Below, piece after piece: positions 8,319-29,729 of a DNA stretch of 64,000 nt (position 1 is the stretch's first letter; each line of letters opens with the position of its first letter). The DNA lies in NCBI RefSeq assembly GCF_006345805.1, contig NC_043012.1:35960001-36024000 (forward strand), in the 5' to 3' direction. Made by a program: the position numbers and the translations under genes. The DNA is from Octopus sinensis. Lineage: Eukaryota. A model generated the notes under the pieces. The model had not been told where the DNA came from. It saw nothing but the letters and a program-made list of their open reading frames with translations, and made no database searches.

Positions 8319-8320
<2 letters not shown>

Positions 8321-8546: not shown

Positions 8547-9160
8547 TATATATATACACTCGTGTTTTGAGATCTATTTTCCTATTTACTTCACCAAACC
8601 TACTCCGTGTGTGTGTATCAGTCTCCATGTATATGTAACGTGCATATATATATTTGTGCGTGTGTGTGTGTATCAGTCTGCATGTATATGCAATGTGCAT
8701 ATACATCTGTGTGCATGTGTGTGTGTCTGTGTGTATGTATCTCACATATATGTGGGTATGCCACACAATAATAGCAATGACGAAGTAAATAATGCATAAA
8801 GCATTGTAAAATAAAATCCATAGAATACGAAACAACTTTATCATATCCCACGATTATTGATTTGTTATAAACATTATCCCATGCCACAGCTAGAGATGAT
8901 GGAGATATTTGTGAAGATACGAAATAAGTGAATCCAGCTGTAAATGATACAGCATGTAGATATCCTGGGTTAAAATGCCCTTAGATTGAGAGAAAGTTGA
9001 AGGCTACATGTGGGATTGAAATCTGCTTGTTATACTACGCAACTGTAAATATTGCTACCAAAGTTCAACTTGTTATGAAGCTTCTCCACTCTGACTGCCA
9101 TAGATATGCAGGGGATAATGCACACACATTCATGTATCTCTTTTTTTCCTCTTTTATTTT

Positions 9161-9196
9161 TCTTTTGATGAAGGACTAGCATCCAAAACGTCAAGA
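9161..9196 (+). ncRNA. Degenerate minimal hammerhead motif
   Basis: TCTT-tTGATGA-A-GGA ctagca TCC-aAAA-CGT-C-AAGA. Stems I-III and the GUC site are intact, but C3 is changed to U and G12 to A. Confidence 0.45.
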
Positions 9197-9257
9197 CTCT
9201 TTCCCTTCTTATTAAGTGTTACACTGGCCTTCTATACATATATGCATATATATATAT

Positions 9258-9303
<46 letters not shown>

Positions 9304-9810
9304 GAACTCTCCTGTTGTTAGATGACATGAGGATTTGACAATTTCTTAGCAAACAACCACACACAGGTGATTTGTTTATAGTGATCAAATGTTTGTGTAG
9401 ACATAAGCTCACTCCTTCCATCAGATTGACATTACCTGTACAGGTGCAAGGGGTGCCACATGTCAGGTGACGAAATGATCGCAGAGCAACGTGAAATGAA
9501 GTACTCTGCTCATGGCATTAAGTCGGTAATTTCAGGGGAGAGAGAGAAAGTCAATTACACCAACCCCAGTAGTCTACTGGTACTTATTTTATCGACCCTG
9601 ACAAAAACACGGTTAAGCATTTTACCCAGAATGCTAACAATGTGGGGACTTACATATAAGGAGATGATAAAATAAATAAATAAGCAAAAAAATATGCACA
9701 GTATACAGTGAAAAGGAAGGGAAATATACTTAGTATACAAAGATAAACTGGAAAAAGGGGGTGGAGGATGATAGAGTTGTAGTCCTCAATAATAATAATA
9801 ATGATGATAA

Positions 9811-10210
9811 TCATCATCGTTTAGCAACTGCTTTCCATGCTGGCATGGGTTGGACGGTTCAACTGGGGTCTGGGAAGCCAGGAGGCTGCACCAGGCCCAG
9901 TCTGATCTGGCAGTGTTTCTATGGCTGGATGCCCTTCCTAATGCCAACCACTCCGTGAGTGTAGTGGGTGTTCTTTACGTGCCACCGGCACAGGTGCCAG
10001 ACAAAGCTGGCAAACGGCCACGATCGGATGGTGCTTTTTATATGCCACCGGCATGGGGGCCAGGCCAGGCTGGCAACGGCCACGAACAGATGGTGCTTTT
10101 TATATGCCACCGGCATGGGGGCCAGGCCAGGCTGGCAACGGCCACGAACGGATGGTGCTTTTTACGTGTCACCGGCATGGGGGCCAGTCGGGGCGGCGCT
10201 GGCAACGGCC
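9811..10210 (-). mobile_element. RTE 3'-end copy with an internal 62-bp tandem expansion
   Basis: Reverse complement of the LINE 3' UTR. The unit gatggtgcttttta recurs at 10027, 10089 and 10151. Confidence 0.9.
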
Positions 10211-10211
10211 T

Positions 10212-10258
<47 letters not shown>

Positions 10259-10274
10259 TAATAATAATAGTAAT

Positions 10275-10624
10275 AAATATGACAACGTGTCTCTAAAAGA
10301 AATGGAGAAACTCTCAAAATACAAAGACCTGGAAATAGAGGTAACTAGAATGTGGAATCTGAAAACAGAAACAATTCCTATCATAGCAGGTGCATTAGGC
10401 ATGATAAAAAAATATTCAGACAAATACATAACAAAAACACCAGGACTTACAAACACATATAACATACAGAAAATTGCACTACTAGGCACTGCACACATCC
10501 TACGCAGAACACTTTCCATACAATAACCATCAGAGCATCACAACAAATCACAGCACATACCCAAGGCACACAGAGCTGCGCTCGGTAGTGAAGTGAAAGC
10601 ACGCTATAAAAATAAAACTACTGA
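10275..10624 (+). mobile_element. 3' fragment of an R4/Dong-like RLE element
   Basis: KEMEKLSKYKDLEIEVTRMWNLKTETIPIIAGALG...QKIALLGTAHILRRTL, followed by a short 3' UTR and flanked by (TAA)n. Confidence 0.85.
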
Positions 10625-11099
10625 ATAATGATAATAATAGTAATAATAATGATTTCATTTATTTGCCACAAGGGAGGGCAATGAGTGGGAAAAAGGATTT
10701 GTTATTTTGACTTGATTAGTGGATAACGAGTTAAATATATAAAATCAGAAATGTTATGCATAGATAAGATATGGATTGAGATGAAAGGAAGGAGATGTAA
10801 GTGGTATGATGATGATGATGATGATGATGATATGATAGTGGTGGTGGTGGAGTTGGTGGCGGCGGCAGTGGTGGTGGTGGTGGTGGCGGTGGCAGTGGTG
10901 AGGTTTAGCTTCAAGTCAACTCAAACAGAGCGAACTTCTGACCATCAACATTCCAAACATGACCATTGCACTTTTTTAAGCGTATCTAAGACTACATTAC
11001 AGAATGCATCCCTTCCTCATTCTAAACAGTGGAGTGTGTTTAGACTGCTGTTTCTAGCAAGTGAGTGACCACTTGGAAGTGCAATCATTTGTTCAAAAC

Positions 11100-12310
11100 A
11101 GGGGGATGTTGATGTTGTTGTGATGTTGATGGTGGTGGTGGTGATGGTAGTGGTGATGGTGGCGGTGGTGGTGGTAGTGGTGGTGATGGTGGTGGTGGTG
11201 GTGGTGGTGGTGGTGGTGGTGGTGGTGGTGGTGCTCTAATAAGAATGGTGATAGACTCCCTTTTAAGCTGAAATCACACAACACAAGCTTAACCCAGTTA
11301 AACTCTGAGTTCAAATTCCGGTGTCTTCCCATCAGGTAAGTACTGTAGGGAATGGGGGGGGGGGGTGAGAAAGGGTCGCTTGGGTGGTGGTGGTAACACT
11401 CATTAATCATTGATTTTCTTCAACATCATCATCATCATCATTTCACTGGTGATTGCTTTTGTTGTTGTTGTTCTTCTTCATGTTGTTGTAATGTTTTTCA
11501 TAACCTTGGTGCTGTTGTTGTTTTGATGCTGTTGGGTCATAGTCATGATGATGATGATGATAATGGTGGCGGTGGTGGTGATGGTGATGGTGATGGTGAT
11601 GATGGTAATGATTGTGGTGGTGGTGGTGGTGGTGATTGTGGTGGTGGTGGTGATGGTAACAATCATGATGGTAGTTATGGAATGTGATGATGTTGACAAC
11701 AATGACAACAGCAATGATGATGAGGAGGAGGAGCAGAAGGAAGCTGATCATTGATGATGATGATGGCGTTATTTGTGGTGATGGTGGTGGTGGTGATTGT
11801 GGTGGTGGTGGTGATGGTGCTGGTGGTGGTTGTGGTGATGGCGATGATGATAATGATGATGATGGCAATGATTGTGGTGGTGGTGGTGGTGGTGGTGATG
11901 GTACTGGTTGTTGTTGTTGTGGTGGTGGTGGTGGTGATAATGCTGCTGCTGCTGATGATGATGCGCTGTTAGTGTTAGTCATTGTTGTTGTTGTTGTTGA
12001 TGATGATGATGATGGCAATGGTGGTAGTAGTGATCATGGTGATGCTCTTGATAATGGTGATGAGGAGGGTTATAATGATGATGACGACAAGGAGGAGGTG
12101 AAGGTGGAAGGAGGAGGTGAAGGTGGAAGGAGGAGAGTGACAATGATTGTAATGAGTACGATGGTGATGATGATGATGATGATGATGATGTGGTGACAAT
12201 AGTGACTATGTTGATGATGACGATGATGACAATGATGATGATGATGAGGATGATGATGATGATGATGGAGGTGGCAAAGGTGGCAATGATGACTGGTGAT
12301 GGTGATGAAA
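11100..12310. repeat. Compound (GGT)/(GAT)/(GTT) trinucleotide low-complexity block
   Basis: This block is the source of the poly-His, poly-Val and poly-Met ORFs. Confidence 0.9.
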
Positions 12311-12660
12311 GGCTTTGGTCAGTCAACCAGTGTCTGTAGTAGAAGACCGCTGGCCAAGGCACCACACTGTGGGATTGAACCTGAAACAATGGGTTCAGAA
12401 GGGTAAAGAAAAACCCCTCTTAGTCCCCATCAGACACAACTGCACCTACAAGCTACCCCTACAGAATAGAATTCATCTTATTATGTGTGTTGTAGTCCTG
12501 ATTCAGTATTATTCAAACAAAGCCGTCACGAGATGACATCTTAGCCATGAGGTTTGTTGTTTCGCTTCGTTCAGCTTTATATCTTTGTAAAGACTTGTTG
12601 GCTTTTAGCTTTGTTTCAGTTTAAATTCAGCTTTGTTTTTGTTTTTTTCAAAATGCAAAC

Positions 12661-12724
12661 CACCTGATGAATGACTGTAACTCGAAAATTTAAAGAAATT
12701 AACAGCCATGAAACGATCGTAGTG
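12661..12724 (+). ncRNA. Candidate minimal type I hammerhead ribozyme (Penelope-like element type), core intact
   Basis: CAC-CTGATGA (12664-12670), stem II ATGACTGT/ACAGCCAT, GAAA (12710-12713), palindromic stem III ACGATCGT, cleavage-site A at 12721, then GTG. Confidence 0.6.
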
Positions 12725-12941
12725 TTATATTAATTATATTTTTAATAATTTTTTGTTATATTTTAAATAATATAAATTAAATAATCTTATGTATTGGCTT
12801 AAGTTTTTCATTGTATGATTTGCCTAAGTGGTTTTTTGTTCTAATTTAATTAATATATATATATATGATGATATGTATGTATGTATATATATATATATAT
12901 GTATGTATATATAATATATATATATATATATATTATAATAT

Positions 12942-12972
<31 letters not shown>

Positions 12973-13028
12973 GTATATATATATGTATATACATGTATAT
13001 ATAATATATATATGTATATATATACATG

Positions 13029-13107
<79 letters not shown>

Positions 13108-13441
13108 ATATCAAGGGAAAAGGGTACTCAATATAATGCTGAGTATATATATATATATATTTTGAAGCTGAAGAAACTAACTACACTAGTTATTAAAGTG
13201 GCTTGAGATTTATTTGTCAAACAAGTGTTACATACAAGACTCTGATGCTCATTTAGCTACAGAAGTGCTTTCAGCTAACACACACACATATTTGTATGCA
13301 AAATACATACATACATATATACACATATATATTTGTGTGTGTGTGTATGTATATATATATATATATATGTGTGTTTATCAATTCATTTTGCAAGATTCCT
13401 GCTTTGAAATTCTGTGTTGAAACAGATATTGTTCTATTTCT

Positions 13442-13838
13442 AGGTGGTCATTTTATTTTTTGCACTATTTTTTCTGGGGTTTTTTTCAATCGTTTTTTAC
13501 TGTCATTTTATTATTTTAATGCTAGTCCAGTGTCCAGAAATCCTTTTGTCACACATCTGTGGCATCTTTAGCAACACTTTCCATTGTTCCGTTCCACCTA
13601 CTCCATTCTCAAAGTATCGCTGAAGAGGTTACAGGTGTGTGATGAAAGATTTCCAGACAATGGACAAGCATTAAAATAATAAAACAACAGTAATAAACAA
13701 GTGAAACAAAAAATAAAAATGCATATGGTGGTGCCCCAGCATGTCCACAGCCTTCGGGCTAAAACATTTTTAAGGATTTTAAGGATATAGTGCATGTGTT
13801 TATTTAGCAAAAGAAAAAAAAATAATAAATGACCATCC
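13442..13838. repeat. Old imperfect inverted repeat (MITE/foldback-like)
   Basis: Left arm about 13460-13580 pairs with 13611-13723 (ttattttaatgct.gtcca.tgtc..gaaatc). The outer ggtcatttta/ataaatgacc ends also pair. Confidence 0.75.
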
Positions 13839-13846
13839 CAAAATAT

Positions 13847-13897
<51 letters not shown>

Positions 13898-14090
13898 TAT
13901 ATATATATAAGAAATTAATAAACTGTATGTTTATTTTATTTACCTATTGGAATAACATTGTCATTGATATAGGTAATATAAACCAGTAAATCTTCAGATA
14001 TCTAATATCCCTTAGGTGTATTTACACCGAGCTTAACTTATGTGTGCGTGTGTAACCTATATATACATGCATACCTACATACATACATAC

Positions 14091-14138
<48 letters not shown>

Positions 14139-14811
14139 TATATATATGTATATATATATATGTATATATATATATAAATTGACATAGCAAATAAAATGTT
14201 TGTGGAGGCAGGAATATTTTTTCAAATATGTGAATAAAATTTCACTTTCATTAAAAAATACAATCCATTTATTTATGTTTTATTTTTTTTTTTCCTTTTA
14301 CTGAAAATAAAATAACAAAGCTATTTAGATGTGCTTCTGTGGAAACATGGAAATTATTTCTATCCCCACCACCACCACCTCATTTTTGATGTCATAAAAA
14401 TGCAGAATTTGCTTCATTCAACTGAAAATTGCATTTTGGAAATTGAATAAAAGAAAAAATAAAATTACCTTCAAAAAATTATTTGAAAATAACATTAGCC
14501 ACATTTCTTATATTAGCATTTTTCCTATTTTGCTTAAGATTTTATTCACACACACACACACATGCATGCTTACACACACACATACACACACATGCATATT
14601 TGTATGTATGTATTTATAATGTATACATATATGTATATATATATATATATATTTATAAGGTGCATGAATATATATATATAGATAGAAAATACACACACAC
14701 GTATACATATGTATGTATGTATCTCTGTCTCTCTCTCAGTATATATGTGTGTGTATGCATATATATATACATACATCTTTAATTAAATACTTAATTGCAT
14801 GCATGTGTGTA

Positions 14812-14880
<69 letters not shown>

Positions 14881-14890
14881 CACATATATC

Positions 14891-14938
<48 letters not shown>

Positions 14939-15411
14939 AATATATATATTATATATGTTATATATATTGAATATGTATATTTTCATACATATATATACAT
15001 ATATATAACGTATTCTCTTACATAGGCTAAATGATTCCTCATATGTCCTGTCATTGTCAGCAACATTAAAAATTACACAACCCATATTTTCAAACATTTT
15101 GTCCTTTCATTAAATCAGTTGATTGTAAAGAAACAGTCAAGGTTATCTTTGACGATTTACTTATTGATTTCATTTGACCGATATTTCCTTTGGAATTCAC
15201 CAGCATATCTTTCTTTGGTTTCAAAATTCTTGTGAGTCTTGTGTCATTGTGTTTCTTCCTCGTTGTTGTGTCGCCTTTACATCATTCTGTCTTGGCCAAA
15301 ATGAACTTCAAATTTTATGAACAATAACAATAATAATAATGATAATAATAATAATAATAATGATAATGATGATGGTGATGATGATGATGATAATAAATGA
15401 ACTTCAGATTT

Positions 15412-15452
<41 letters not shown>

Positions 15453-15508
15453 TGATGATGATGATAATAAAAATCATTGTGATAATGATAATAATAATAA
15501 TAATAATA

Positions 15509-15553
<45 letters not shown>

Positions 15554-15869
15554 TAATAATAATAATAATAACTACAGCAACAATAGTAATAATAATAATA
15601 ATTGCTAGTTTCAGTTGTGGGATATTTTATGATATATCAAATTGCATAAGTTAATTATTAATTTTTTTTCTATATATATTTTTTGTTTATATTTTTCTTT
15701 ACCAAATAGCATTTTCATTTCAAACATGATTTTATAAATAACAAGCTGACATGCCCCCCACCACTCATCGAGTCTCTCCATAATAAAGTTTTACTTTAGA
15801 ATTAATGTGTTAAAAAGAACTGAATAAATGTATATACACATATATGCACATATATGCATATATATATAT

Positions 15870-15923
<54 letters not shown>

Positions 15924-15988
15924 ATATATATATACATATATGCATATATATATATATATGTATGTATGTATATATATACATATGTATG

Positions 15989-16028
<40 letters not shown>

Positions 16029-16147
16029 TATGTATGTATGTTTATATGTATGTATGTATATATATGTATTTATGAATATATATACATATATACATATATA
16101 CATATGTATATATATGTATATATATATATACATGTATATATATATAT

Positions 16148-16209
<62 letters not shown>

Positions 16210-16349
16210 TATGCATGTGCGCATGTGTTTGTGTGTTTATATATATATATGTATGCATGAATGTATACAAAAGAAACAAGAAGCTAAATTGAAATCTTAC
16301 CCACCTCTGTGTGTAAACATGTATGCATAAGCGTGTGTATGTGTGTATA

Positions 16350-16414
<65 letters not shown>

Positions 16415-16636
16415 GTGCATTTACACATGTATAAGTATGTATATGTGTGTGTGCATATGTGTATATATGTACATGTGTGTGCATGTGTGTGTGTGTGCGT
16501 GTGTGCATGTGTGTGTGTGTGTGACTGTAACCCTTCTCCCCTCTAGTCAGTTATTCATGTAGTTCTCTATTTTATTACTCAATATTCAACTTAAAGTGTT
16601 GTTTTTTTTTCTCCAACATGTTATTCACATGTACAG

Positions 16637-16686
16637 TTTGACAATGAAACACCTGAACATGGAGAAGCTGCTTAAAAATGCTGTAG
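16637..16686 (+). CDS. Candidate alternative 50-nt exon of the Piccolo-like gene
   Basis: First AG after a T-rich tract, with donor TAG|gtaata. It is open only when entered in phase 2 (LTMKHLNMEKLLKNAV) and exits in phase 1, the same phases as exon 6332-6444. Confidence 0.4.
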
Positions 16687-17136
16687 GTAATATAACTGCT
16701 CTACCATTGCCATAATCCATCTCTGTTCACATATGGTCAGCACCATAGCACTAACCCTACCCCCTAGCATGCATTCTCTCTATATCTCTCTCTACCTCTC
16801 TTTCTCTACCTCTCTACTCTCTCTCTCTCTCTCTCTCTTTTTCTACCTCTTTTTCTCTCTCTCTTTCTCTCTATCCAAGAATTCTATAAACACATCTTTA
16901 AACCAATCAGAAATTGTGTCTGGTTTCACTGACCACTGTCCACTCTTAGTCCGCTCTATCCAGAATCTTTTAGTGGATATTAAAACCCCTTTTAATGTTT
17001 CACTTGGTGTCCAGTCTCAACAAATATCTGCACATACAGCACTATCTCCCAGATTCCTTCCTTCCTTTCTTCCTGTCTTCCTTCTCTTATAGACTCATCA
17101 AGCCTTTGTCTTGTTTAATTACTATTATTATTATTA

Positions 17137-17177
<41 letters not shown>

Positions 17178-17785
17178 ATTATTATTATCAAATAATCTTA
17201 CACAACATAGGGTGGTGAAGAAAGGATTTGTATGAATGCTGTTGTTGTTGTAGTTTCTGTTAAATAAAGAATACCTCTCGTTTAGTTCTCCCTGTTCCTT
17301 AATTTAACCTTACCTTTAATCCCACCTGTAGATTTCATGAAACAAATACCTGTAATTTATTGGGGTTAACAGTATGCACTTGGCAAACATTCGCTATAAG
17401 GGATTTGCACCTTGATAAGTAGAGCCCTTGTGTTTCTGTATTTCCCTATGTGTGTCTGTGTGTGTCTGTGTATTTCACTGTATGCATGTGTGTGCGTGTG
17501 TGTGTGTGTGTGTGCAAAAGTCACCCATGGTGATGCTGGATCCTCAAGCTTCCAGTCTGGAACTCTGGTTCACTTTTAGCTGAAGCCATAGTTGCTATGC
17601 ATCTTCAGTTTCTGGTAACAATTAGATTCATTTGTCCTTGACATGCATCACAAAATCTGACCTTCACATACGACATGATGTTTGACCTTGACCTACTTCA
17701 TAATATTCGGTTGACATAGTATTTAAACTGTCCTTGACACATTTGTGAATGACAGTTAAATATGTTTGATATGGAGACAAGTCAC

Positions 17786-18290
17786 AGTACATGGGGGCTT
17801 ATCCTGTGGTGACATGTTATCTGTATATGCTACATGGGGACTTGCCCTTGATATGCTACATGGGGACATGTCCTTAAAATATGCATCCTGGGGTTATGTT
17901 CTTGATATATGCTACATGGGTACATTTTCTTGATATCCATTACATGAGGACATGTCCTTGATGTATTCTACATGGAGCCATGCCCTTGCTATGCTCCATG
18001 TGGATATGTTCTTAAAATATACAGCCTGGGGATAAGTTCTTGGCATATGCTACATGGGTACATTTTCTTGGTATACATTACATGATGACATGTCCTTGAT
18101 ATGCTACATGGGGACATGTCCTTAAAATATACATCCTGGGGATAACTTCTTGATATATACTACATAGGGGACATGTCCTTAAAATATACATCCTCGGGAT
18201 AAGTTCTTGATGTATGCTACATGGATATATATTCTTTTGATATACATTACATGAGGACATGTGTTTGATATATGCTACATGGTGCCAACT
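17786..18290. repeat. Degenerate minisatellite with about 24-26-bp monomers
   Basis: Recurrent atatgctacatgggg/acatgtccttg and cttaaaatatacatcctggggata units. Confidence 0.85.
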
Positions 18291-18602
18291 GATCCTGCCA
18301 CAAAGATAATGTGAAGTTTCCATTGTTTCTTATATAAGAGTGTATGTGTGTGTGTGCAAATACATGTATGTGCATGTCTCTGAGTGTGTGTGTGTCTACA
18401 TGTGTGTCACTATTTCTGCTCCATTAATTCAAAGCCCTTAGACTTAACAAAAGATATAACATTCTTTGTATATACAATATCCTGACAGTTTTTCTGTGAG
18501 ATATCTTCCCTAATTAATGGTAGAATATTATTCTTCTAACGTGAAATCTCTTGCGTCTTATTTTTAAAATATCATCAATTTTTTTTTTCATATATCTTAT
18601 AT

Positions 18603-18822
18603 ATTGGTTTCAAATTTTGGCACAAGGCCAACAATTTTGAGGAAGTGGGTAAGTCAATTACATCGACCGCAGTACTCAACTGGTATTTATTTTATCGACC
18701 CCCCAAAATGATGAAAGGAAAAGTCGACTTCAGTGAAATTTGAACCTGGAATGTAATGACAAAACTCAGCCCATAAAACCTTTTGTCCTGTATGCTAACA
18801 ATTCTGCCAGCTTGCCACCTTA
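18603..18822 (-). mobile_element. SINE family A copy
   Basis: Reverse complement of family A: ggtttcaaattttggcacaaggcc...attctgccagcttgccacc. Confidence 0.82.
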
Positions 18823-18824
18823 GC

Positions 18825-18886
<62 letters not shown>

Positions 18887-19130
18887 GCGGACGTTAAATG
18901 ATGATGATGATGATGATGATGAATAATGAAATTATTGTGTATAGTGCTGAAGTGCACTATAAATAGATCTTGTATATTAGAATGTGATCAGTTCACTGAG
19001 ATATATCATATACACTTTTAAATAAGCCCTTTACTCCCAGTTGAGCATAGCCATTGAATAACTTTCTTCCATTGTTCTTAACTCTTGGCTCCCCCCTCCC
19101 ATCTTGTTGGTTTTGAATTGTCCTCCATGC

Positions 19131-19161
19131 TTCTCTAACTTTGCTTTTGTTTTAGGTAAGG
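19131..19161 (+). promoter_or_regulatory. Candidate recursive splice site (3'ss abutting 5'ss)
   Basis: ttctCTAACtttgcttttgttttAG|GTAAGG shows a branch-point motif, a pyrimidine tract, and AG at 19154-19155 directly followed by a 5' splice-site consensus. Confidence 0.5.
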
Positions 19162-19974
19162 GTGTTGGACCAATGCAAACCCACTTTTACCTCTGGGAAG
19201 ATGTGGTCCATATTTGCCTAGCCCTTGTCCTTTGATAGGGCATGAGAAACCCCTACCATATGTTTACAGTTCTGCTGGGACAAGAAGTTCGGCAGCTCTG
19301 TAGCTCACTGGATCCTGTCAACCCATCCAACCCATCCCAGCATGGAAAAGGGACATTAAATGATGATGATGATGATGATTCTGGTGGCAGAGCTTCCAGG
19401 GTCATTGAGGTACACAAACCCTCACATCACCACCACAAGGACTGGGCCTTGTCATAGATACATCATATGTGGTGAAATATTATTTTCTACTTATGATATA
19501 TCTTATATATTAGAATGTCATTTGCTTCCTATGATTTATCCTAAGTGGTATAATACTCACAATGATATCGTATATACTAGAATATCATATTTGGCACTAG
19601 GAAGAGCATTACACCATATAAAAGAACCATGCCAAGGCAGAAACTGGAGCCTGGTACCGTCCTCTGACTTTCTAGTTCCAGTCAAACTGTCTGACCCATG
19701 CCAGCATGGAAAAACGGACGTTAAATGATGATGGTTGTAATGATGAGGATGAGTTTACTGTTATATACCATATATGGATATTAAATGTTATATATGACAT
19801 ACCATTAGTTTCTTGTGATATAAGCATATATCTTACATAATCAATAAACTATAATCAATGATTCCTTTCACATCTTTGATATTTCTTCAATCATTTTTAA
19901 CCCCAGTCTAGTGTCTTTTATTAATTTCACGTTTGTTTGGTGATTTTGTTGTGAATTGCAGGCATGGGAAGATT

Positions 19975-20008
<34 letters not shown>

Positions 20009-20540
20009 AAGGAGAGAGAGACAGAGAAAGAGCAAAAGTGTGTGTATGAGTATACATGTGTGTGTGTGTGTGTAGGTGTGTGTGTGTATAGGTGTGTAAG
20101 TATAAAAGTGTTTGTACCAGAATCAATGTTTCATTGTCTGTAGAATAAGGTATTAATGGCATGAGGTACAGACCTGTTTTAAACTTGATGCATTTCTAAA
20201 AGCCATACCCTCTTTTAAGGGTCACCATGCACATGTTCTCAGCTCTAGGGCCTGTTTTAAGACCCCCAAACCCTCAGCTCTATTCTGTCAAGTGCATCCT
20301 ACATAACAAACTGCCTCACCCACCTGCTGGGATTTGAAGACAACCACAATAGGTGTGTCTGGACTAACACTTAAAAGGGATCATATGATACAGAGAGTAC
20401 CCAGAGTACCCTGTTCAGAAATGTAACCAAGGTAACCAAAACCAAACTTTTTTTCTTTTCTTTCTTTTGTCTTCATTAGTCATCTTTCATCTATCATCAG
20501 TCCCTGTTACTCATTTCTCCCAGACACTTGCTGCCATCCC

Positions 20541-20750
20541 AAGATTTAGCCAGATTTTACTAGATTTAGCTGGATTTAGCAAGTATTTGCCAGATTTTAG
20601 CCAGAGTTAGCTAACATTTATTAGAGCTTTCCAGAATTTTCAAAATTTTAGCCAGAAGTAGCTACAGTTTATCAGAGGTTGCTAGAGTTTGACAGATTTT
20701 GACAGTTTCACAGAAATAACCAGAGTCAGCTAAAGTTTGCCAGAGATATT
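20541..20750. repeat. Degenerate about 10-bp periodic repeat (consensus near CAGATTTAGC)
   Basis: About 20 consecutive variants such as agatttagcc, agattttact, agagttagct and agagtttgac. Confidence 0.7.
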
Positions 20751-21330
20751 TTTAGGTAGAAGCTCTATATTATAGATTCTTACTGGCACTTGTACTCGTG
20801 AGGGTGTTTACCCAAGGTGGACTGAGCTGGCTTTGGCCTCTGAATTTACCATGTCCCTCACAAATGCTGACCATATCTGCACAGGTCCTTCAGAAATTTC
20901 AGGTTGCTCTCCAGCATGCTGAAAAACCATCCCTGAGAAGTGAGGCATCCCTTTAGCTTTGGTTAAAGCATGTCTCTAGGACCCCCTTCAAATCTCTGCT
21001 AAATCTGCTCCAATAATTGACTATGATTTGGGCAATAAATCCACTGCAAGGGTCGACAATCGATGACAAGATGAGCTGTTAAGGGGTCACACTAGCCCTA
21101 AGTATGTATGTGATTAGGGACCACTTGTGAATTTGTGATCTCACTGAAACTCCAAACATATTGTAAATACCTCTTACATACACCCCACAACACATTCCAC
21201 CCGGCAGTAATTCTCTTATCCCTCACCCTTTTCACCACTCTTTTGTTTAAACATATTCACAACAATTTTCATACATTCCAACTGTATTTTCTCAGCCACA
21301 TTTCATTAACAATATTTCATATTTTATAAT

Positions 21331-21532
21331 GTGGCAGAAATGTTAGCACACCAGGTGAAATGCTTAGCAGCACTTTGTCTGTCTTTACGTTCTGAGTTCA
21401 AATTCCACTGAGGTCGACTTTGCCTTTCATCCTTTTGGGGTCGATAAATTAAATACCAGTTGCATGCTGGGATCGATCTAATCAACTGGCTCCCTTTCCC
21501 AAAACTTTCAGGCCTTGTGCCTAGCATAGAAA
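21331..21532 (+). mobile_element. SINE family A copy
   Basis: tggcagaaatgttagcacacc...gagttcaaattcc...gtcgactttgcctttcatcc...ggccttgtgcctag. Confidence 0.85.
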
Positions 21533-22043
21533 AAAAATATCTCATATTTTATTGAAGGTTTTTAAATTTGCTTAAATCTCCCCCTGATCACCTGGGTAAC
21601 CTCCCACTCGCCAACTCACCCAGTTATCCATCCTCACAACCATTTCTTCCCAACATTCATCGATCCAGCCATTCATCCATTCAACCATCCAACCACTCTC
21701 CTACCCATTCAACTACCCACCCACCCACCCATCTTTCTCCTCCATCCATTCATCCAGCCATTCAACCATCATTTCCACTCATCTTTACACCCATTCATTC
21801 TCCCCACTGAGCTCCATCCTACCTACCTACCTACCTACCCCACCCATCTTTCACGCCTTACCTTTTCTCTCTCCCTCTCTTCTATAAGCTGACTAATTAA
21901 AATACACTTAATGGTATATATGCGTACTTAATTGCCATGTACACTTCATACATGTGCATTGCTTTCATGTAGCAGTTAATGTAGCACTTGTCCACATGTG
22001 AACAGATTATAGTTAAAGTGGCATGCTTCCATCAGCAATGTTT

Positions 22044-22094
<51 letters not shown>

Positions 22095-22201
22095 ATCTAT
22101 CTATCTATCAATCTATTACTATATCTATCCTCTTTTTATCTTTACCTATTTCTAGATTGTTCCGTGTGTATGTATATGTTTGTGTGTATGTGTATCTATA
22201 C

Positions 22202-22242
<41 letters not shown>

Positions 22243-22254
22243 ATATGCACATAT

Positions 22255-22285
<31 letters not shown>

Positions 22286-23080
22286 CATATACAACACACA
22301 TATATATATATATGTGTGTATATATATGTATATATATACATATATATATATAGTGCGTATGTGTGTTTGTATGTAGGTATATATATGTGTGTGTGTGGTG
22401 TGTGTGTGTGTGTGTGCATGTATGTACATATGTATGTATGCATGTTTGTATGTATATATATACATGCAATCAATTTATCTTTCACATTTCCTTTAAATGC
22501 AAAGCATCATTCTTTTCGTGTAACTTAAAGACCACTTAAAAAATATAAAAAAATAGAAATATAAAAAAAAGCATAAAAAAACAACAAAAACACCAACAGT
22601 CCCCCCCCCCTCCTTCTGATAATGTTGACTAAACTTAATATTTCTCCCTTTCCATCCTCAAAATATATAAAGAATAAAATTTGTAATTAACCTTCACAAA
22701 TGAACTAATTAGGATTTAACTTGATATCAAAAATATTGCAGGAAGCTGAAAATGAAAAAAATTAGTAATTGATTATTAATTTAATAATTGACTAATTAAT
22801 TACTGCTGCCCCAGAATAAATTGGTTGCTGCTACCATTTCATGGGATCCTGAAGAATTTGGAAAAACTCACTGAATTGGTGTTAAGTAATTTAAAGTGAA
22901 ATGTATACACATACAGACACATGTAGACATATATACATGTATGTATGTATGTATGTATGTATGTATGTATGTATGTATGTATGTATGTATGTATGTATGC
23001 ATGTATATATATGTATGTGTGTGTGTATATAATATATATATATATATATACACACACACATATATATATATGTGTGTATA

Positions 23081-23121
<41 letters not shown>

Positions 23122-23369
23122 ATATGTATGTATGTATATTCTGGATGTTTGATGTTGACATAAACTCTCTCTCTCTTGGTTACTCCCTCTCTTGGACAAA
23201 GCAGCGCCACAGACGGCTGATTGCAAATGGAGAATTTCTAACTTAACATGTGTATAAACAAAGTAGGCTATACATATGTATATACGTAGATACATATGTA
23301 TATATATATATGTGTATGTGTGTGTATATATATCTATATGAGTGTGTATATATATATTATGTATATATG

Positions 23370-23410
<41 letters not shown>

Positions 23411-23485
23411 AATATATATATATATACACACATGTATATATATATATGTATACATGTGTATGTATCTATCTATATCATGTTTATA

Positions 23486-23535
<50 letters not shown>

Positions 23536-23695
23536 GGACACAAAATAATGTAATATATATATATAAACATATACATAAAAACTTACAAATATATATATAT
23601 ATATACTTATAGATATATAAATCTATTTGTGAGAGTGTGTGTGTAAATATATTTTTATGTGTGTATGTTTGTATGTATAAATATATATATATGTA

Positions 23696-23750
<55 letters not shown>

Positions 23751-24078
23751 AGTATGTAGAATGCTTACATAGCTAATCACAGGTATATATTTAAGCTGTT
23801 TATCAGTTCATTGATGGAATTGAATAACGTAAAGATCACAGCATCGTTAATTGATGGCGATTCAGTTTCACAAACGGACCGAATAACCTTGATGCCGGAC
23901 CCAAACACACCTAAACCCTGGTTTCTTAATTGTCATATCGCATATCACATCACACTCCTCCTCGCATTTGCTCTTACTCCTCCCTCTGTCTCTCACTTGC
24001 TATCTGTCAGAAATTTGTATGTATATATGTGTATATATATGCACACATATACATATGCATGTATATACTGTATGTATG

Positions 24079-24116
<38 letters not shown>

Positions 24117-24287
24117 CACATATATATATATATAAGCATATACATCTATATATATATATGTATATATGTGTAAGCGTATCTGCGTTTTATAATTTCTTTC
24201 ACAGTTGTATTGTCAAAGCGGTAAAAACTATCACAAAAGCAAAATTTAAGGGCTCTATTCCCACAGGTGCTAAATGACCCCTTTTTA

Positions 24288-24334
<47 letters not shown>

Positions 24335-24747
24335 TCCCTTTTATATTCTAAAATAACCCATGCCATTATGGTGAGGTATGCAATTATAGTAATGATGATG
24401 ATGATGATGATTTAGTGCAACTTATTATCATTGTATTTTAGTAGAAGAAAGATCTCATTGTAATAACAACAATAAGCCTAATAAGATATATAAGTGTGTG
24501 TATATGTGTGGTATCTCTATCCCTCTCTCTTTCTCTCTCTATCTGTCCGTCTGTCTATCTATCTCTCTCTCTATATCTATCTATTACTATTATCTATGAT
24601 CTATCTATCTATCGTCTGTCTGTTATCTCTCTATTATCTATCTATATTATCTATATATATATCTATATATCTATATATATATCCATATTATATATATATA
24701 ATATATATATATATATATGTGTGTATATATATGTGTGTGTGTATATA

Positions 24748-24793
<46 letters not shown>

Positions 24794-24936
24794 AGAAAGA
24801 GAGATAGATAGATAGATGATATAAATAATTTTATATATATTATTATATTATCTATCTATCTTTTTATTTTTCTTTCTTTCTTTCATTCTTTTGTTCTATA
24901 TATTTATCTGCTTCTATCACTATTTATCTACCTGTA

Positions 24937-24989
<53 letters not shown>

Positions 24990-25376
24990 GTGTGGTGTGT
25001 GTGTGTACATATATATATATGCGATATCCACACATACATTTATATAATTTATATACATGTATGTACGTGTTTATATATATATACGTATTTATATATATAC
25101 CTATTAATATATATACGTATATGTGCATATATATGTATGTGTGTGTAAGTGTGTGTATGTGTGTATAAATGCATATATGTATTTGCGTGCGTGTATATAC
25201 ATAAACATAGACACACACACACATATGCACAGTTATACTCAACAATAACATTTAGCGATATAGGATAATATTTATGCAATACTAGAGTTGGTATTGTAAT
25301 AATAACAATGATGATGATGACAATGATGATGATGACGACGATGACAATGATGATGATGATGTGATTGGCTCCCCAA

Positions 25377-25424
<48 letters not shown>

Positions 25425-25628
25425 CATTATTATCATTAGAAAGAGTACATCGACAGGCATGGCAGAGTTTGGACTTACATACACTGGAGGTTATGCTCTC
25501 ATTATGGAATCGGAACAGAGAAAGTGATGGCATAAGCACATGCCAGGAAAGCTCTCCAAGAAGCGCAAAGCTAAAATTCTTCCTCTGAGATCTGCCAATA
25601 TTTTATGAGACAAGAAATCAAGACTAAA

Positions 25629-25753
25629 TAATCAGATTGTCAACTGTTGATAATGTGTCTCTGGAAGAAATGGAGAAATTACTGAGATATTAAGATCTGG
25701 AAATAAAGATAACCAGAATGAGGGAATTGAAAACAGAAAGGTTTCTTGTAAAA
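25629..25753 (+). mobile_element. Short diverged R4/Dong-like fragment
   Basis: DNVSLEEMEKLLRY*DLEIKITRM aligns by eye with the copy at 10275. Confidence 0.65.
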
Positions 25754-25756
25754 AGG

Positions 25757-25981
25757 GGTTTCAAATTTTGGCACAAGGTGAGATATTTCTGGGAAGGGGA
25801 TAAGTCAATTACATCGACTTCAGAACTCTGTTGGGACATATTTTATTGACCCCCCAAATGATGAAAGACAGAGTCAACCTTGGCAGAATTTGAACTCAGA
25901 ATGCTAAGATGGACAAAGTTCCACTAAGCATTTTACCCAGTGTGCAAGGGATTCTGCCTTCTTGCTGCTCTCATGATACCT

Positions 25982-26059
<78 letters not shown>

Positions 26060-26292
26060 GTGATAATAATGATAATAATCCCTTCTACTACAGGCACAAG
26101 GCATGAAATTTTGGGGGAGGGTGCCAGTTGATTAGATTGACCTCAGTATGCAACTGGTACCTAATTTATCGACCTGGGAGGATGAAAGGCAAAGTCGATC
26201 TTGGCCGAATTTGAACTCGGAATGTAAAGACAGACGAAATACTACTAAACATTTTGTCCTATGTGCTAACGTTTCTGCCAGCTAGCTGCCTT
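25757..26292 (-). mobile_element. Two tandem SINE family A copies (about 25757-25960 and 26076-26292) separated by (TAA)n
   Basis: Both are reverse complements of family A, containing gatgaaag.ca.agtc.a.cttgg..gaatttgaactc. Confidence 0.8.
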
Positions 26293-26302
26293 AATAATAA
26301 TA

Positions 26303-26610
26303 ATTATGGAGACCTGAGAATTGAGATTGTTAAGATGTGGCAGCTACGAGAGTCAAACATAAAGGTTATCCCTATTGTCATCGGAGCGTTGGATTCAATA
26401 CCACCCAGTCTGAAAAAACATCTGAAAACCTTAGAAATACTCTACAACCTAAATTTATTGTAAAAGTCGGCATTACATGGAACTGCACGCATATTGCATA
26501 AAGTACCGTCTGTCTGTGGTCCTTGTTGTGACTTGACAAACAGTGCAAAAACCCAGTAGACACAATATCTTCAATCAATAACCCCATGATACTGTATACT
26601 GTGCAACATC
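26303..26610 (+). mobile_element. 3' fragment of an R4/Dong-like RLE element
   Basis: YGDLRIEIVKMWQL..VIPIVIGALD..KSALHGTARILHKV, lying between (TAA)n tracts. Confidence 0.75.
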
Positions 26611-26642
<32 letters not shown>

Positions 26643-27568
26643 TGATAATAATCCTTTCTAGAATAGGCACAAGGCCTGAAATTTGGGGTAAGGGATCTAG
26701 TTGATTTCGTCAGCCATGCTAAGGATATTGCCTGCCTGTCACTTGTCACCATGAGACATAAGTCTTAAACACATCTGGTCAGTTTCCCTCTCTCTCTCTC
26801 TCTCCTTTTACTCTTTCTAATGGTCAGTGGTTTCACCCACCTCTCTACTCTTCAACATCACCATCAACATCATCATTATCACCATTATCAGCGTCATAGT
26901 TATTGTAATCATCAACATGATTACCACCACCATCATCATCATCATCACCATCATCATCAGCACCATCACCATCTTCATCATCATCATCACCACCGCCACC
27001 ATCACCACCATCATTATCATCATCACCATCACCATTGTCATCATCATCACCACCACCACTATCATCATTATCATCGTCGTCCTAGTGAAATCTTTCTCCC
27101 ACCTTTGCACCCCGTCCCCCACCCCATCATGTACCCCTGCTAAATAAACGGCAAGTACACATCTCAGTGTTTATCCAGATTGCAGCTGCTTTCCTTTAAA
27201 CTTGTTCTACATCAGTGACTGGTCTTCCTGCCCGTGGCTCACATGCAAACACCTCCACCCCTTACTTCCTACCACTTCCCATCCACAACCACACACACAC
27301 ACACACACACAACACACACACAACACACACACACACATTGATACTTATAATATTAAGTTTATTCAAGGAACAAATACTATTAACCAAAACCATGTCAGGG
27401 TGGCTACGGTTAATAATATAAGTATAAAAAGCTATAATGCCACCTTCTCAAAGCCAACTGTAGAAATACGTAGTTTATTCCACATTTATAAATGCTATTT
27501 TGATACTATTTTAGTAAAAAATATGTTCTAAATTCCTTCCGTAAATGTAATGAAAAATTATATATATA

Positions 27569-27960
27569 GACTCAGGGGTGGCTGTGTGGTAGGGAATTTA
27601 TTTCCCAACTACATGGTTCTGGGTTCAGTTCCACTGTATGCCACTTTGGGCAAGTGTCTTCTACTATCGGCTCAGGATGACTGAGGCCTTGTGAGTGGAG
27701 TTTGTAAATGGAAGCTGAAAGAAGCTTGTCATATGTGTGTGTTTGTGTGTTTGTCTTTGTGTTTGTGTTTGTCCTCCACCATCGCTTGTCAACTGGTGTT
27801 GGTGTACTTACATCCCTGCAACTTGGCGGCTCAGCAAAAGAGACTGAAAGAATAAGTACCAGGCTTTAAATCAGAAAAAATGGTATTCATTCAACTACAA
27901 AATTTTTTAAGTTGGTGCCCCAGCATGGCCACAGTCCAATGACTGAGAAAAGTAAAAGAT
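27569..27960 (+). mobile_element. SINE family B copy
   Basis: ggggtggctgtgtggtagg...gggttcagttcc...ctttgggcaagtgtcttctactat...ccagcatggccacagtccaatgactga. Confidence 0.82.
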
Positions 27961-28294
27961 AAAGAATATGTGTGTGGGTGTGTGTACATATATATCATTA
28001 TCACCATCATCATCATCATCATTATTTAAAGATCTGTATTCCATGCGTTGGACAGTTTGACAGGATTTGACACGTCCAAGGACTGTGACATGCTGCTGTG
28101 TCAGCTTTGACATGGTTTCTACAGCTGAATACCCGTCCTAAAGCCAACTACTTCACAGACTGGACTGGGGGGGGGGGCTTCTTTCATGTCACCAATACTA
28201 TTGAACTCAACATGTAGCTCACAAGACTACAAAGAGCTTTAAAGTGTGTGTGTGTATGTGTACATGTGTATGCATGTATGATTATATGTGTATA

Positions 28295-28553
28295 CATCAT
28301 CTTCATCATCATCCTCATCGTTTACCGTCCGCTTTCCATGCTAGCATGGGTTGGACGATTCAACTGGGGTCTGGGAAGCCAGGAAGCTGCACCAAGCCCA
28401 TTCTGATCTGGCAGTGTTTCTACAGCTGGATGCCCTTCCTAATACCAACCACTCCGTGAGTGTAGTGGGTGCTATTTACGTGCCACCGGCACAGGTGCCA
28501 GGCAAGGCTGGCAATGGCCACGATTGGTTGGTGCCTTTTACGTGCCACCAGCA
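28295..28553 (-). mobile_element. RTE 3'-end copy
   Basis: catcgtttaccgtccgctttccatgctagcatgggttggacg...gtgccaccagca is the reverse complement of the LINE tail. Confidence 0.88.
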
Positions 28554-28659
28554 TATATGTGTGTGTGTGTGTGTGTATGTATACGGACAAATCTGCATCA
28601 TGCAATGCAGAGTAGATAAACAAAAGAACTTTAAACAGTCAAATCGAAGGATATTAAGT

Positions 28660-28745
28660 AAAAAGCCTGAAGAAACTACACCAGTAATATAGTAGGGGTG
28701 CAGTTGCAATGGTTACCAATTGGTGCAGTTGAAACGTGTGTTGGT
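28660..28745 (+). ncRNA. Degenerate hammerhead motif
   Basis: CTGAAGA (28667-28673), stem II AACTACACC/GGTGCAGTT (8 of 9 pairs), then GAAACGTGT. Stem I and the cleavage site are unclear. Confidence 0.4.
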
Positions 28746-29492
28746 CTATGTAAAGCTGAATATATATCAAAAGAATTTAAGGTGATGCTATGCAACTTCA
28801 TAATGATCCTTATTGTTCATGTATATATGAGTGGGTTTACTGAGAAGCTCATGTATATGGACAACCCCCAAATACCCCTTCCTCACCCCAAAAGGATTAG
28901 TAAAATAAAAATTATATGGTATAACCTCCTTTCAACCTTGAAGTTTCCACCATCATAGCTAGGGGCTTCCTGACATTAATTATGAAACACTTCCCCAGAG
29001 GTCACAAGTATTACAAATTTTTAACCCCCTAACATCAAGGTGAGCTAATCCATTCTTGGACACCATCACATCTAACATCACACGCATCAAGAGATGTAAA
29101 AATGCACCACCTCAACCCCAACCTGCAACTCCTAAAACCCAACCATGTGCCCTAGTATACAGAGCCACCGTTACAGCAATTGATGGCATTACTCGGCACA
29201 ATACGAGTATGACAGCTAATCACTCCAAGGGAAGCTACTCCCAGCATATGCACACACTCACATCCAGGTACAGGGAGAACTCTACTTATTTGTCTCATTT
29301 TCTCTGGAGACTCCGTGACCTCTGAGACAAAACACCCTGCATCAAGTGAACTAAATATATATATGTGTGTGTGTGTGCATATATATATATGTATATATAT
29401 ATATGTATATTGTACATATGTATTATATATGTATATATATATATATATACATATATGCATACATATATATATATATATATATACATACATAT

Positions 29493-29537
<45 letters not shown>

Positions 29538-29562
29538 ATTATATTATATATATTTATGTGCT

Positions 29563-29597
<35 letters not shown>

Positions 29598-29698
29598 TCA
29601 TGTTGAAACAGACATTATCTTGGGAGGATCATTTTGCCAATAAAAGCGCACACATTGATTCTGTTTTACGTTTTCCATTATTATTATTATTATTATTA

Positions 29699-29729
<31 letters not shown>

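What the first reader, a model, noticed from the sequence alone, without database searches (positions are those of the whole stretch)
19131..19161. Textbook recursive-splicing (ratchet) site near the middle of the 27.6-kb intron
CTAAC branch motif, an AG-free pyrimidine tract and TAG|GTAAG occur in unique sequence, splitting intron 6445-34021 into 12.7 and 14.9 kb. This zero-length-exon layout is established for long introns in Drosophila and vertebrate neuronal genes. I am not aware of it being characterised in cephalopods. If read as an exon in phase 1, it hits TGA after 26 codons, as expected for a non-coding RS exon.
Basis: partly seen in the sequence, partly recalled or inferred. Interest (0 to 1): 0.7.

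Follow-up and report, generated by a model that had tools for sequence, protein, structure and literature searches.

The report
Unproven recursive-splice-like motif in octopus intron
A splice-acceptor signal directly abutting a splice-donor signal really does sit in non-repeated DNA near the middle of a 27.6-kb intron of an octopus Piccolo/RIM-like synaptic gene, but sequence alone cannot show that it is used for stepwise ("recursive") intron removal, and one feature such sites normally have is missing.

Summary
CTAAC (19135-19139), an AG-free T-rich tract, and TAG|GTAAGG (AG 19154-55, GT 19156-57) are present. They lie on the sense strand of a real intron (6445-34021) and split it into 12,711 and 14,866 nt. 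Three distant orthologues read straight from exon B (6332-6444) into exon C (34022-34248), which confirms the intron.

The motif sits in sequence with no other copy in the window or in 143 kb of Octopus vulgaris DNA. A 5'-truncated SINE tail begins about 135 nt downstream.

A composite this good is uncommon: about 0.009 are expected per intron of this size. That still implies a few hundred chance sites per octopus genome.

- **For recursive splicing:** TT at -5/-6, a regenerated donor stronger than the native one, a mid-intron position, stop codons just downstream, and a weak sense-strand excess of similar sites (11336, 49538).
- **Against:** no usable donor within 400 nt downstream to define the cryptic RS-exon that fly and mammalian sites need. 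The branch A is at -18. The intron is short by mammalian standards.

Conservation and RNA evidence could not be tested. My estimates are: silent or sporadic decoy about 0.45, true recursive site about 0.30, acceptor of an unannotated (possibly terminal) exon about 0.20.

The parts
6332..6444 (+). Exon B of a Piccolo/RIM/Fife-like gene. It encodes ...GSCHSSYDNLEYISDDDDDEY, ends in phase 1, and has donor ATG|GTACGT.
   Evidence: Sequence. tblastn of orthologues P0057, P0046 and P0092. Donor score 3.1 bits.
6445..34021 (+). The 27,577-nt host intron.
   Evidence: Orthologues read ...SSYDNLEFV.DD.YE|RC...HGVDP.QLAAQLEGI with nothing in between. Exon C's edges are conserved in another octopod contig, L001.
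19051..19153 (+). AG-free, pyrimidine-rich zone (73% Y over 100 nt). Its last 14 nt, tttgcttttgtttt, form the polypyrimidine tract.
19135..19139 (+). CTAAC branch-point-like motif, with the branch A at 19138 (-18 from the junction).
   Evidence: This is the only one of 15 strong acceptor-like sites on the + strand with an exact CTAAC.
19154..19161 (+). AG|GTAAGG: a 3' splice-site AG directly abutting a 5' splice-site core, the putative ratchet point.
   Evidence: Acceptor half 2.6 bits, against 3.4-7.7 for the gene's real acceptors. Donor half 5.8 bits in the genomic context and 5.2 after ligation to exon B, against 3.1 for the native donor.
19156..19238 (+). Hypothetical read-through from the site: 26 codons in phase 1, then tandem stops TGA and TAG.
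19291..19380 (+). 5'-truncated SINE/LINE-type 3' tail plus a (GAT)n run. It contains ATTAAA at 19355. It is not part of the motif but bounds it downstream.
   Evidence: nhmmer E=7e-9 against a model of the window's SINE copies. Alignments. 43 hits in O. vulgaris loci. ATTAAA found.
18825..18925 (.). (GAT)n/(ATT)n-type microsatellite block that bounds the unique segment upstream.
34022..34248 (+). Exon C (DRCMEANQHGVDPEQLAAQLEGI...RHVIDK), with donor AAG|GTAAGA.

Best explanation
The most likely single reading is that this is an unselected composite of splice-like signals. It is a good acceptor (branch motif, T-tract, TAG) that happens to be followed by GTAAGG, in ordinary non-repeated intronic DNA of a long neuronal gene.

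On this reading the spliceosome mostly ignores it because nothing downstream defines an exon for it. If the acceptor is occasionally used, the product ...GAATATG|GTAAGG carries a strong regenerated donor. It would be re-spliced to exon C and leave no trace in mRNA. That amounts to sporadic, stochastic recursive splicing rather than a dedicated ratchet point.

Shown here: the motif, its strand, its intronic position, its uniqueness and the local chance rate. Inferred: that it is not a selected, constitutively used site.
For: - **Genome-wide chance rate.** About 0.23 strong acceptor-like sites occur per kb, and 29 of 19,969 AGs are followed by GTRAG. Together these give about 3.3e-4 composites per kb, or about 330 per Gb of sense-strand intron. 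With a looser position-weight score, a site at least this good is expected 0.32-0.36 times per 64-kb strand.
- **No RS-exon donor.** The best GT within 400 nt scores 0.02 bits and lies 316 nt away. 88% of random 400-nt stretches do better. Tested fly sites and the mammalian sites cited need such a cryptic exon (PMC8605326; PMC6110457).
- **Rarity in long-intron genomes.** Recursive splicing is rare in the long-intron genomes studied. Mouse brain has about 20 sites, all in introns longer than 51 kb of genes longer than 294 kb, mostly first introns (PMC8797253). Lungfish shows no expansion with intron size.
- **Branch point.** The branch A is at -18, just outside the -36 to -21 range where all but five mapped fly ratchet-point branch points lie.
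- **Ordinary surroundings.** No RNA family match and no unusual fold around the site.
Against: - Locally the composite is rare: about 0.009 expected in this intron, and none in 349 kb of control strand sequence.
- It has TT at -5/-6, as 99.5% of fly ratchet points do.
- Its donor is stronger than the native donor of exon B.
- Its acceptor half is within the range of the gene's real acceptors.
- It lies at 46% of the intron, where fly sites tend to lie.
- All three non-exon AG|GTAAG sites on the sense strand have at least 14/20 pyrimidines upstream. None of 16 do on the antisense strand and in O. vulgaris control DNA.
- Mann-Whitney p = 0.015 for the acceptor scores of strong-donor sites.
Confidence: 0.45

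Rival explanations
1. This is a genuine recursive splice site (ratchet point). Exon B is first spliced to the AG at 19155 using the CTAAC branch point, which removes 12.7 kb. The regenerated donor ATG|GTAAGG is then spliced to exon C, which removes 14.9 kb. The mRNA is unchanged, and the tandem stops downstream penalise any read-through.
For: - Juxtaposed acceptor and donor on the sense strand of a confirmed 27.6-kb intron of a long synaptic gene.
- TT at -5/-6, a T-rich tract and an exact CTAAC.
- The regenerated donor scores 5.2 bits against 3.1 for the native donor.
- The segments of 12.7 and 14.9 kb are close to the fly median of 16.4 kb, and the intron is within the fly range of 11-133 kb.
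- The position is mid-intron.
- The sequence is non-repeated.
- About 0.009 such sites are expected by chance in this intron.
- There is a weak sense-strand excess of similar sites.
Against: - No downstream donor is present to define an RS-exon; the region is actually depleted of donor-like GTs.
- The branch A is at -18.
- The donor is GTAAGG rather than GTAAGT.
- This is not a first intron, and it is short by mammalian standards.
- The enrichment statistics are post hoc, rest on 3-5 sites, and weaken to about p = 0.13 by my own calculation (not a tool result) if the flagged site itself is dropped.
- There are no RNA or conservation data.
- Recursive splicing has not been reported in any cephalopod.
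Confidence: 0.3
2. This is the acceptor of an unannotated conventional exon. The most plausible form is an alternative 3'-terminal exon (19156 to about 19375) that is defined by the ATTAAA at 19355 in the SINE tail rather than by a donor. It would produce a truncated isoform ending ...DDDDDEYGKGVGPMQTHFYLWEDVVHICLALVL* that lacks the C2 domain. A poison or cassette exon using a weak donor is an alternative form.
For: - The acceptor is good.
- An open frame of 26 codons is followed by tandem stops.
- ATTAAA lies 199 nt downstream and is followed by a U/G-rich stretch.
- The absence of donor-like GTs downstream is what a terminal exon would show.
- In mouse, 46 of 84 AGGT sites with junction reads turned out to be unannotated exons, against 19 recursive sites.
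Against: - The ATTAAA-(GAT)n tail is a generic feature of a very abundant SINE, so it is not specific evidence.
- A strong donor at the first base of an exon would favour re-splicing, and bound U1 would suppress the poly(A) site (established knowledge, not tested here).
- None of the three orthologues inspected carries a similar C-terminal peptide.
- A search with the reading frames across the site found nothing, although that search is insensitive.
Confidence: 0.2
3. The motif is carried by a transposable element or other repeat, and so is one copy of a dispersed pseudo-splice site rather than a locus-specific signal.
For: The 430-bp block is bracketed by (GAT)n runs and ends in a SINE tail at 19291-19380. 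Weaker alignment suggests SINE homology may begin at about 19228.
Against: The segment 18926-19290 has no second copy in the 64-kb window and no meaningful match in 143 kb of O. vulgaris DNA, where the tail has 43 matches. The nhmmer model of the SINE stops at 19291. Only families with more than about 20,000 copies would have been detected, so a low-copy repeat is not excluded.
Confidence: 0.05

Closest known systems
Drosophila intronic ratchet points ('zero-nucleotide exons': Ubx, kuz, luna and others; Duff et al. 10.1101/006163; Pai et al. PMC6110457; Joseph/Lai PMC8605326)
   Same: AG|GT with a juxtaposed acceptor and strong donor. A T-rich tract with TT at -5/-6. A long intron of a neuronal or developmental gene within the fly size range. 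A mid-intron position. Segment sizes of 12.7 and 14.9 kb near the fly median. Out-of-frame, stop-containing sequence just downstream.
   Different: There is no short cryptic RS-exon with a downstream donor. The branch A is at -18 rather than -21 to -36. +6 is G rather than T. Conservation and RNA intermediates are unknown. The organism is a mollusc with a vertebrate-like intron size distribution, where a 27-kb intron is not exceptional.
Vertebrate recursive splice sites with RS-exons (Sibley et al. 2015, as cited in PMC8605326 and PMC8797253)
   Same: The AGGTAAG core with a pyrimidine-rich upstream 20 nt. A brain-expressed long gene. A premature stop if the downstream sequence were included.
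   Different: Vertebrate sites lie in introns longer than 51 kb of genes longer than 294 kb, mostly in the first or second intron. They depend on an RS-exon defined by a downstream donor. Here the intron is 27.6 kb and lies late in the gene (after the PDZ domain), and no such donor is present.
Decoy or pseudo splice sites in long introns (control AGGT sites in the fly and mouse studies above)
   Same: A consensus-like motif with no supporting exon-definition partner. It is expected by chance at hundreds of places per genome of this size.
   Different: It is stronger than typical decoys. It is the only strict composite in 64 kb, none occur in 349 kb of control strands, and it carries an exact CTAAC.

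Membership tests
Recursive splice site / ratchet point | Acceptor (tract plus YAG) directly abutting a donor (GTRAGT-like) on the sense strand inside an intron | tested here: met
   ttttgttttAG|GTAAGG at 19154-19161. It lies inside intron 6445-34021 of a + strand gene.
Recursive splice site / ratchet point | Prominent pyrimidine tract with TT at -5/-6 (99.5% of fly ratchet points) | tested here: met
   -3 to -6 are TTTT, and the upstream 20 nt are 16/20 pyrimidine.
Recursive splice site / ratchet point | Regenerated donor after the first step is strong, typically stronger than competing donors | tested here: met
   ATG|GTAAGG scores 5.2 bits, against 3.1 for native ATG|GTACGT and 0.02 or less for any GT in the next 400 nt. 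These come from a crude position-weight matrix, not MaxEntScan.
Recursive splice site / ratchet point | Cryptic RS-exon: a usable donor a few tens to about 200 nt downstream for exon definition | tested here: not met
   The best downstream GT is GTG|GTGAAA at +316 nt, scoring 0.02. 88% of random 400-nt stretches contain a GT scoring at or above 0. The requirement is described.
Recursive splice site / ratchet point | Host intron is unusually long | tested here: inconclusive
   27,577 nt falls within the fly range of 11.3-132.7 kb but below the fly mean of 45 kb and below the mouse minimum of 51 kb. What counts as 'long' for octopus introns was not measured.
Recursive splice site / ratchet point | Branch point about 21-36 nt upstream of the AG | tested here: inconclusive
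   The best motif, CTAAC, puts the branch A at -18. The 103-nt AG-free zone would allow a more distal branch.
Recursive splice site / ratchet point | Sequence downstream is non-coding, out of frame or stop-containing | tested here: met
   TGA and TAG follow after 26 codons in phase 1.
Recursive splice site / ratchet point | Strong conservation of the AG|GT core relative to the flanking intron | not testable with these tools
   No orthologous intron could be retrieved. Contigs L001 and L002 reach only 2.9 kb upstream of exon C. A search with reading frames across the site found nothing, but a control with an abundant SINE frame found only 7 proteins, so that null is uninformative.
Recursive splice site / ratchet point | RNA evidence: exon-to-site junction reads, lariats from both segments, saw-tooth read density | not testable with these tools
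   No RNA-seq access.
SINE/LINE-derived repeat copy | Other copies of the motif-bearing segment exist in the genome | tested here: not met
   19060-19260 matches only itself in the window. 18926-19290 has no meaningful hit in 143 kb of O. vulgaris DNA, while the adjacent tail has 43. nhmmer homology starts at 19291.

The most novel reading that the evidence does not exclude
19156 is a constitutively used ratchet point, possibly together with 11336 and 49538. If so, fly-style recursive splicing operates in a cephalopod synaptic gene in introns of only about 25 kb. At 19156 it would work without a donor-defined RS-exon, for instance through intron definition or through transient terminal-exon definition by the ATTAAA 199 nt downstream. 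That would be the first such site in Lophotrochozoa and a variant recognition mode.
Probability: 0.12. Interest if true: 0.6.

Novelty: new member of a known kind. Interest (0 to 1): 0.3.

Why it matters
Recursive splicing has been documented in flies and vertebrates. In the library searched, no paper holds both "recursive splicing" and "octopus", and the one paper with "cephalopod" mentions each term once. Octopus combines protostome ancestry with vertebrate-like long introns. Showing dedicated ratchet points there would indicate whether the mechanism is an ancestral bilaterian tool for long neuronal genes or a lineage-specific one. The host gene encodes a Piccolo/RIM-type active-zone protein, so mis-splicing would have a clear neuronal read-out.

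As it stands, this is one motif-level candidate. It is useful as a target list for an RNA-seq check (19156, 11336, 49538), not as a discovery.

Tried and rejected
1. **Orthologous intron for a conservation test.** A protein search with exons B+C found only exon-C-bearing short contigs of other cephalopods. A search with three reading frames across the site found nothing. A control with an abundant SINE frame returned only 7 O. vulgaris proteins, so that null carries little weight.
2. **Repeat origin.** Self-BLAST, MAFFT alignments and an nhmmer model of the window's SINE copies show homology only from 19291 on, or weakly from about 19228. I reject a repeat origin for the motif itself, with the caveat that low-copy repeats are not excluded.
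3. **Known RNA or structured element.** Rfam gave nothing relevant, and the fold z-score was -0.52. Rejected.
4. **Coding cassette exon.** The downstream frame hits stops. An upstream 'exon' 19051-19155 would hit TGA at codon 6 in phase 1 (read by eye from the sequence). None resembles the three orthologue proteins inspected. Rejected as coding exons.
5. **Locating the small exon** that in orthologues encodes ...GD(I/L)Q before exon D. It was not found in 34249-59546.
I used rounded position-weight matrices from general knowledge, so all splice scores are approximate.

Full report
**What is there.** The sequence at 19130-19161 reads cttctCTAACtttgcttttgttttAG|GTAAGG. CTAAC is at 19135-19139, which puts the likely branch A (19138) 18 nt from the junction. 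The AG is at 19154-19155 and GTAAGG at 19156-19161. No AG occurs between 19051 and 19153. The 20 nt before the AG are 16/20 pyrimidine, and the preceding 100 nt are 73% pyrimidine, which is the top 2% of 100-nt windows. Reading from the site in phase 1 gives 26 codons, then TGA and TAG at 19233-19238.

**The gene and the intron.** Pfam finds a C2 domain in the exons at 59547-59677 and about 63170-63346. A profile-free search of 1.8 billion representative proteins with the second C2 exon returned long orthologues. P0057 (2232 aa) has a FYVE/Piccolo-type zinc finger, a PDZ domain and a C2 domain. The window's C2 domain is closest, among single-domain solved structures, to Piccolo C2A, followed by RIM. 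The gene is therefore a Piccolo/RIM/Fife-like presynaptic active-zone gene on the + strand.

tblastn of P0057, P0046 and P0092 maps the end of the PDZ domain to about 3413-3523. It maps ...GSCHSSYDNLEY to 6381-6428, RC...HGVDP.QLAAQLEGI... to 34022-34239, and the C2 domain to 59541-59675 and 63170-63346. In all three orthologues the exon B and exon C peptides are contiguous. Exon C's edges are also where similarity ends in a genomic contig of another octopod. Intron 6445-34021 (27,577 nt) is therefore real, and the site divides it into 12,711 and 14,866 nt. Exon C ends at 34248.

**Repeat context.** The site lies in a 430-bp block between two (GAT)n runs. The last 75-150 nt of that block (19291-19380, and weakly from about 19228) are the 3' tail of an abundant SINE/LINE family. 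At least eight other copies are present in the window, and an nhmmer model of five copies matches 19291-19366 at E = 7e-9 and no further upstream. The motif-bearing part has no second copy in the window.

I fetched seven 20-kb loci of Octopus vulgaris (GCA_951406725.2) through SINE-derived annotated proteins. The tail 19291-19357 has 43 BLAST hits in them. The segment 18926-19290 has none of substance. 'Unique sequence' is therefore supported, although a low-copy repeat cannot be excluded.

**Chance.** AGGTAAG occurs 5 times on the + strand and 4 times on the - strand, which is about what base composition predicts by my hand estimate (counts). I defined a strict composite as follows:
- YAG|GTRAG;
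- at least 16/20 pyrimidines upstream;
- no AG in the 40 nt upstream;
- a YTNAY between -45 and -12.

Under that definition, dinucleotide shuffles give 0.013 sites per 64-kb strand. Multiplying the number of strong acceptor-like sites by the frequency of GTRAG after AG gives 0.043 on the + strand. The same product, using 349 kb of control strands (window antisense plus O. vulgaris loci), gives 0.009 per 27.6 kb, or about 330 per Gb. No strict composite was observed in those controls.

With a looser position-weight score, sites at least as good are expected 0.32-0.36 times per 64-kb strand. A second site in the same intron, 11336 (cAG|GTAAGT), scores higher. The motif is locally unusual, but a few hundred equally good ones are expected by chance in an octopus-sized genome.

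**Features that fit recursive splicing.**
- TT at -5/-6, as in 99.5% of fly ratchet points.
- The acceptor half scores 2.6 bits, comparable with the real acceptor of exon C (3.4) though below those of exons B and D (7.7 and 7.0).
- The donor regenerated by joining exon B to the site, ATG|GTAAGG, scores 5.2 bits against 3.1 for the native ATG|GTACGT.
- The site lies at 46% of the intron, and fly sites cluster near midpoints.
- The intron and segment sizes fall inside the fly ranges.
- All three non-exon AG|GTAAG sites on the sense strand (11336, 19156, 49538) have at least 14/20 upstream pyrimidines. The figure is 0 of 4 on the antisense strand and 0 of 12 in O. vulgaris control DNA, where the background probability is 0.08.
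- Among strong-donor AGGT sites, acceptor scores are higher on the sense strand (Mann-Whitney p = 0.015; Fisher p = 0.055).

The last two statistics are post hoc, rest on very few sites, and include the flagged site.

**Features that do not fit.** Current models, tested in flies and mammals, hold that a ratchet point is first recognised as the acceptor of a short cryptic RS-exon bounded by a downstream donor. Downstream of 19156 the best GT in 400 nt scores 0.02 bits and lies 316 nt away. 88% of random 400-nt stretches in the window contain a GT scoring at or above 0, and 58% contain one at or above 2. By contrast, 11336 has GGG|GTGAGA (5.07 bits) 29 nt downstream, so it fits that model better.

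The branch A at -18 lies just outside the fly range of -36 to -21. In mouse brain, recursive sites are few (about 20), lie in introns longer than 51 kb of genes longer than 294 kb, and occur mostly in the first two introns. Most AGGT sites with junction reads there proved to be unannotated exons. Nothing links recursive splicing to cephalopods in the literature available.

**Other readings.** An ATTAAA at 19355, inside the SINE tail, lies 199 nt downstream of the site. Together with the lack of downstream donors, this allows an alternative terminal exon that would truncate the protein before its C2 domain. The signal is generic to the SINE family, so it is weak evidence. No Rfam family or unusual RNA structure overlaps the site.

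**Weighing.** The answer depends on how common recursive splicing is in octopus, which is unknown.
- If it is fly-like, with thousands of sites among many long introns, a motif this good would most likely be real.
- If it is mouse-like, it would most likely be a decoy.

Averaging over that uncertainty, I penalised for the missing RS-exon and gave modest credit for the sense-strand excess. My estimates are about 0.45 for a decoy that is silent or only sporadically used, 0.30 for a true recursive site, 0.20 for the acceptor of an unannotated exon, and 0.05 for a repeat-borne motif. RNA-seq junction, lariat and saw-tooth evidence and cross-species alignment would decide it.

Noticed in passing
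window 11296-11370: There is a second recursive-splice-like site in the same intron: ...ggtgtcttcccatcAG|GTAAGTAC at 11336. It matches the consensus donor exactly and has a strong donor, GGG|GTGAGA, 29 nt downstream, which is an RS-exon-like layout. It is unique in the window. Its weaknesses are A,C at -5/-6 and an AG 24 nt upstream. It would split the intron into 4.9 and 22.7 kb.
   Followed up: partly
window 49500-49560: There is a third sense-strand AG|GTAAG site, at 49538, in the next long intron (34249-59546). It lies about 80 nt downstream of another SINE-tail remnant. Its acceptor half is weak (0.5 bits). Donor-like GTs lie 118 and 314 nt downstream.
   Followed up: partly
window 6414-6437: Exon B encodes DDDDDE through GAC(GAT)4GAA, the same trinucleotide repeat as the SINE tails. 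Orthologues have only DD here. This looks like a coding microsatellite expansion.
   Followed up: no
window 44299-47678: An uninterrupted 927-codon reading frame on the + strand has endonuclease, reverse-transcriptase and sub-threshold PHD-like matches, so it is a LINE. It is followed at 47252-47678 by a full-length match to the window's SINE family. It may be the SINE's LINE partner, or those 'SINEs' may be truncated LINE 3' ends.
   Followed up: partly
window 39272-39910 and 30348-30680: A mariner-type transposase remnant lies inside the intron at 39272-39910 (+ strand, Pfam Transposase_1, E = 1e-23). The frame at 30348-30680 looked transposase-like by eye but gave no Pfam hit.
   Followed up: no
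window 34249-59546: Orthologues carry a further 20-40 residues ending ...GD(I/L)Q between the exon C and exon D peptides. No matching exon was found here. Exons C and D are phase-compatible, so direct joining is possible.
   Followed up: partly
   Followed up: partly
L003-L009 (Octopus vulgaris GCA_951406725.2): Several 103-167-aa 'hypothetical predicted proteins' in the O. vulgaris annotation are reading frames of the abundant SINE. They are 67-88% identical to the frame at window 9811-10293, so they are probably annotation artefacts.
   Followed up: no
window 7000-8230, 15280-16420 and many others: The window carries a very heavy microsatellite load: long (TATG/CATA)-type, (TA)n, (GAT)n and (GGT)n runs. 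They account for most of the 88 AG-free stretches of 100 nt or more, so long AG-free zones are not informative in this genome.
   Followed up: partly
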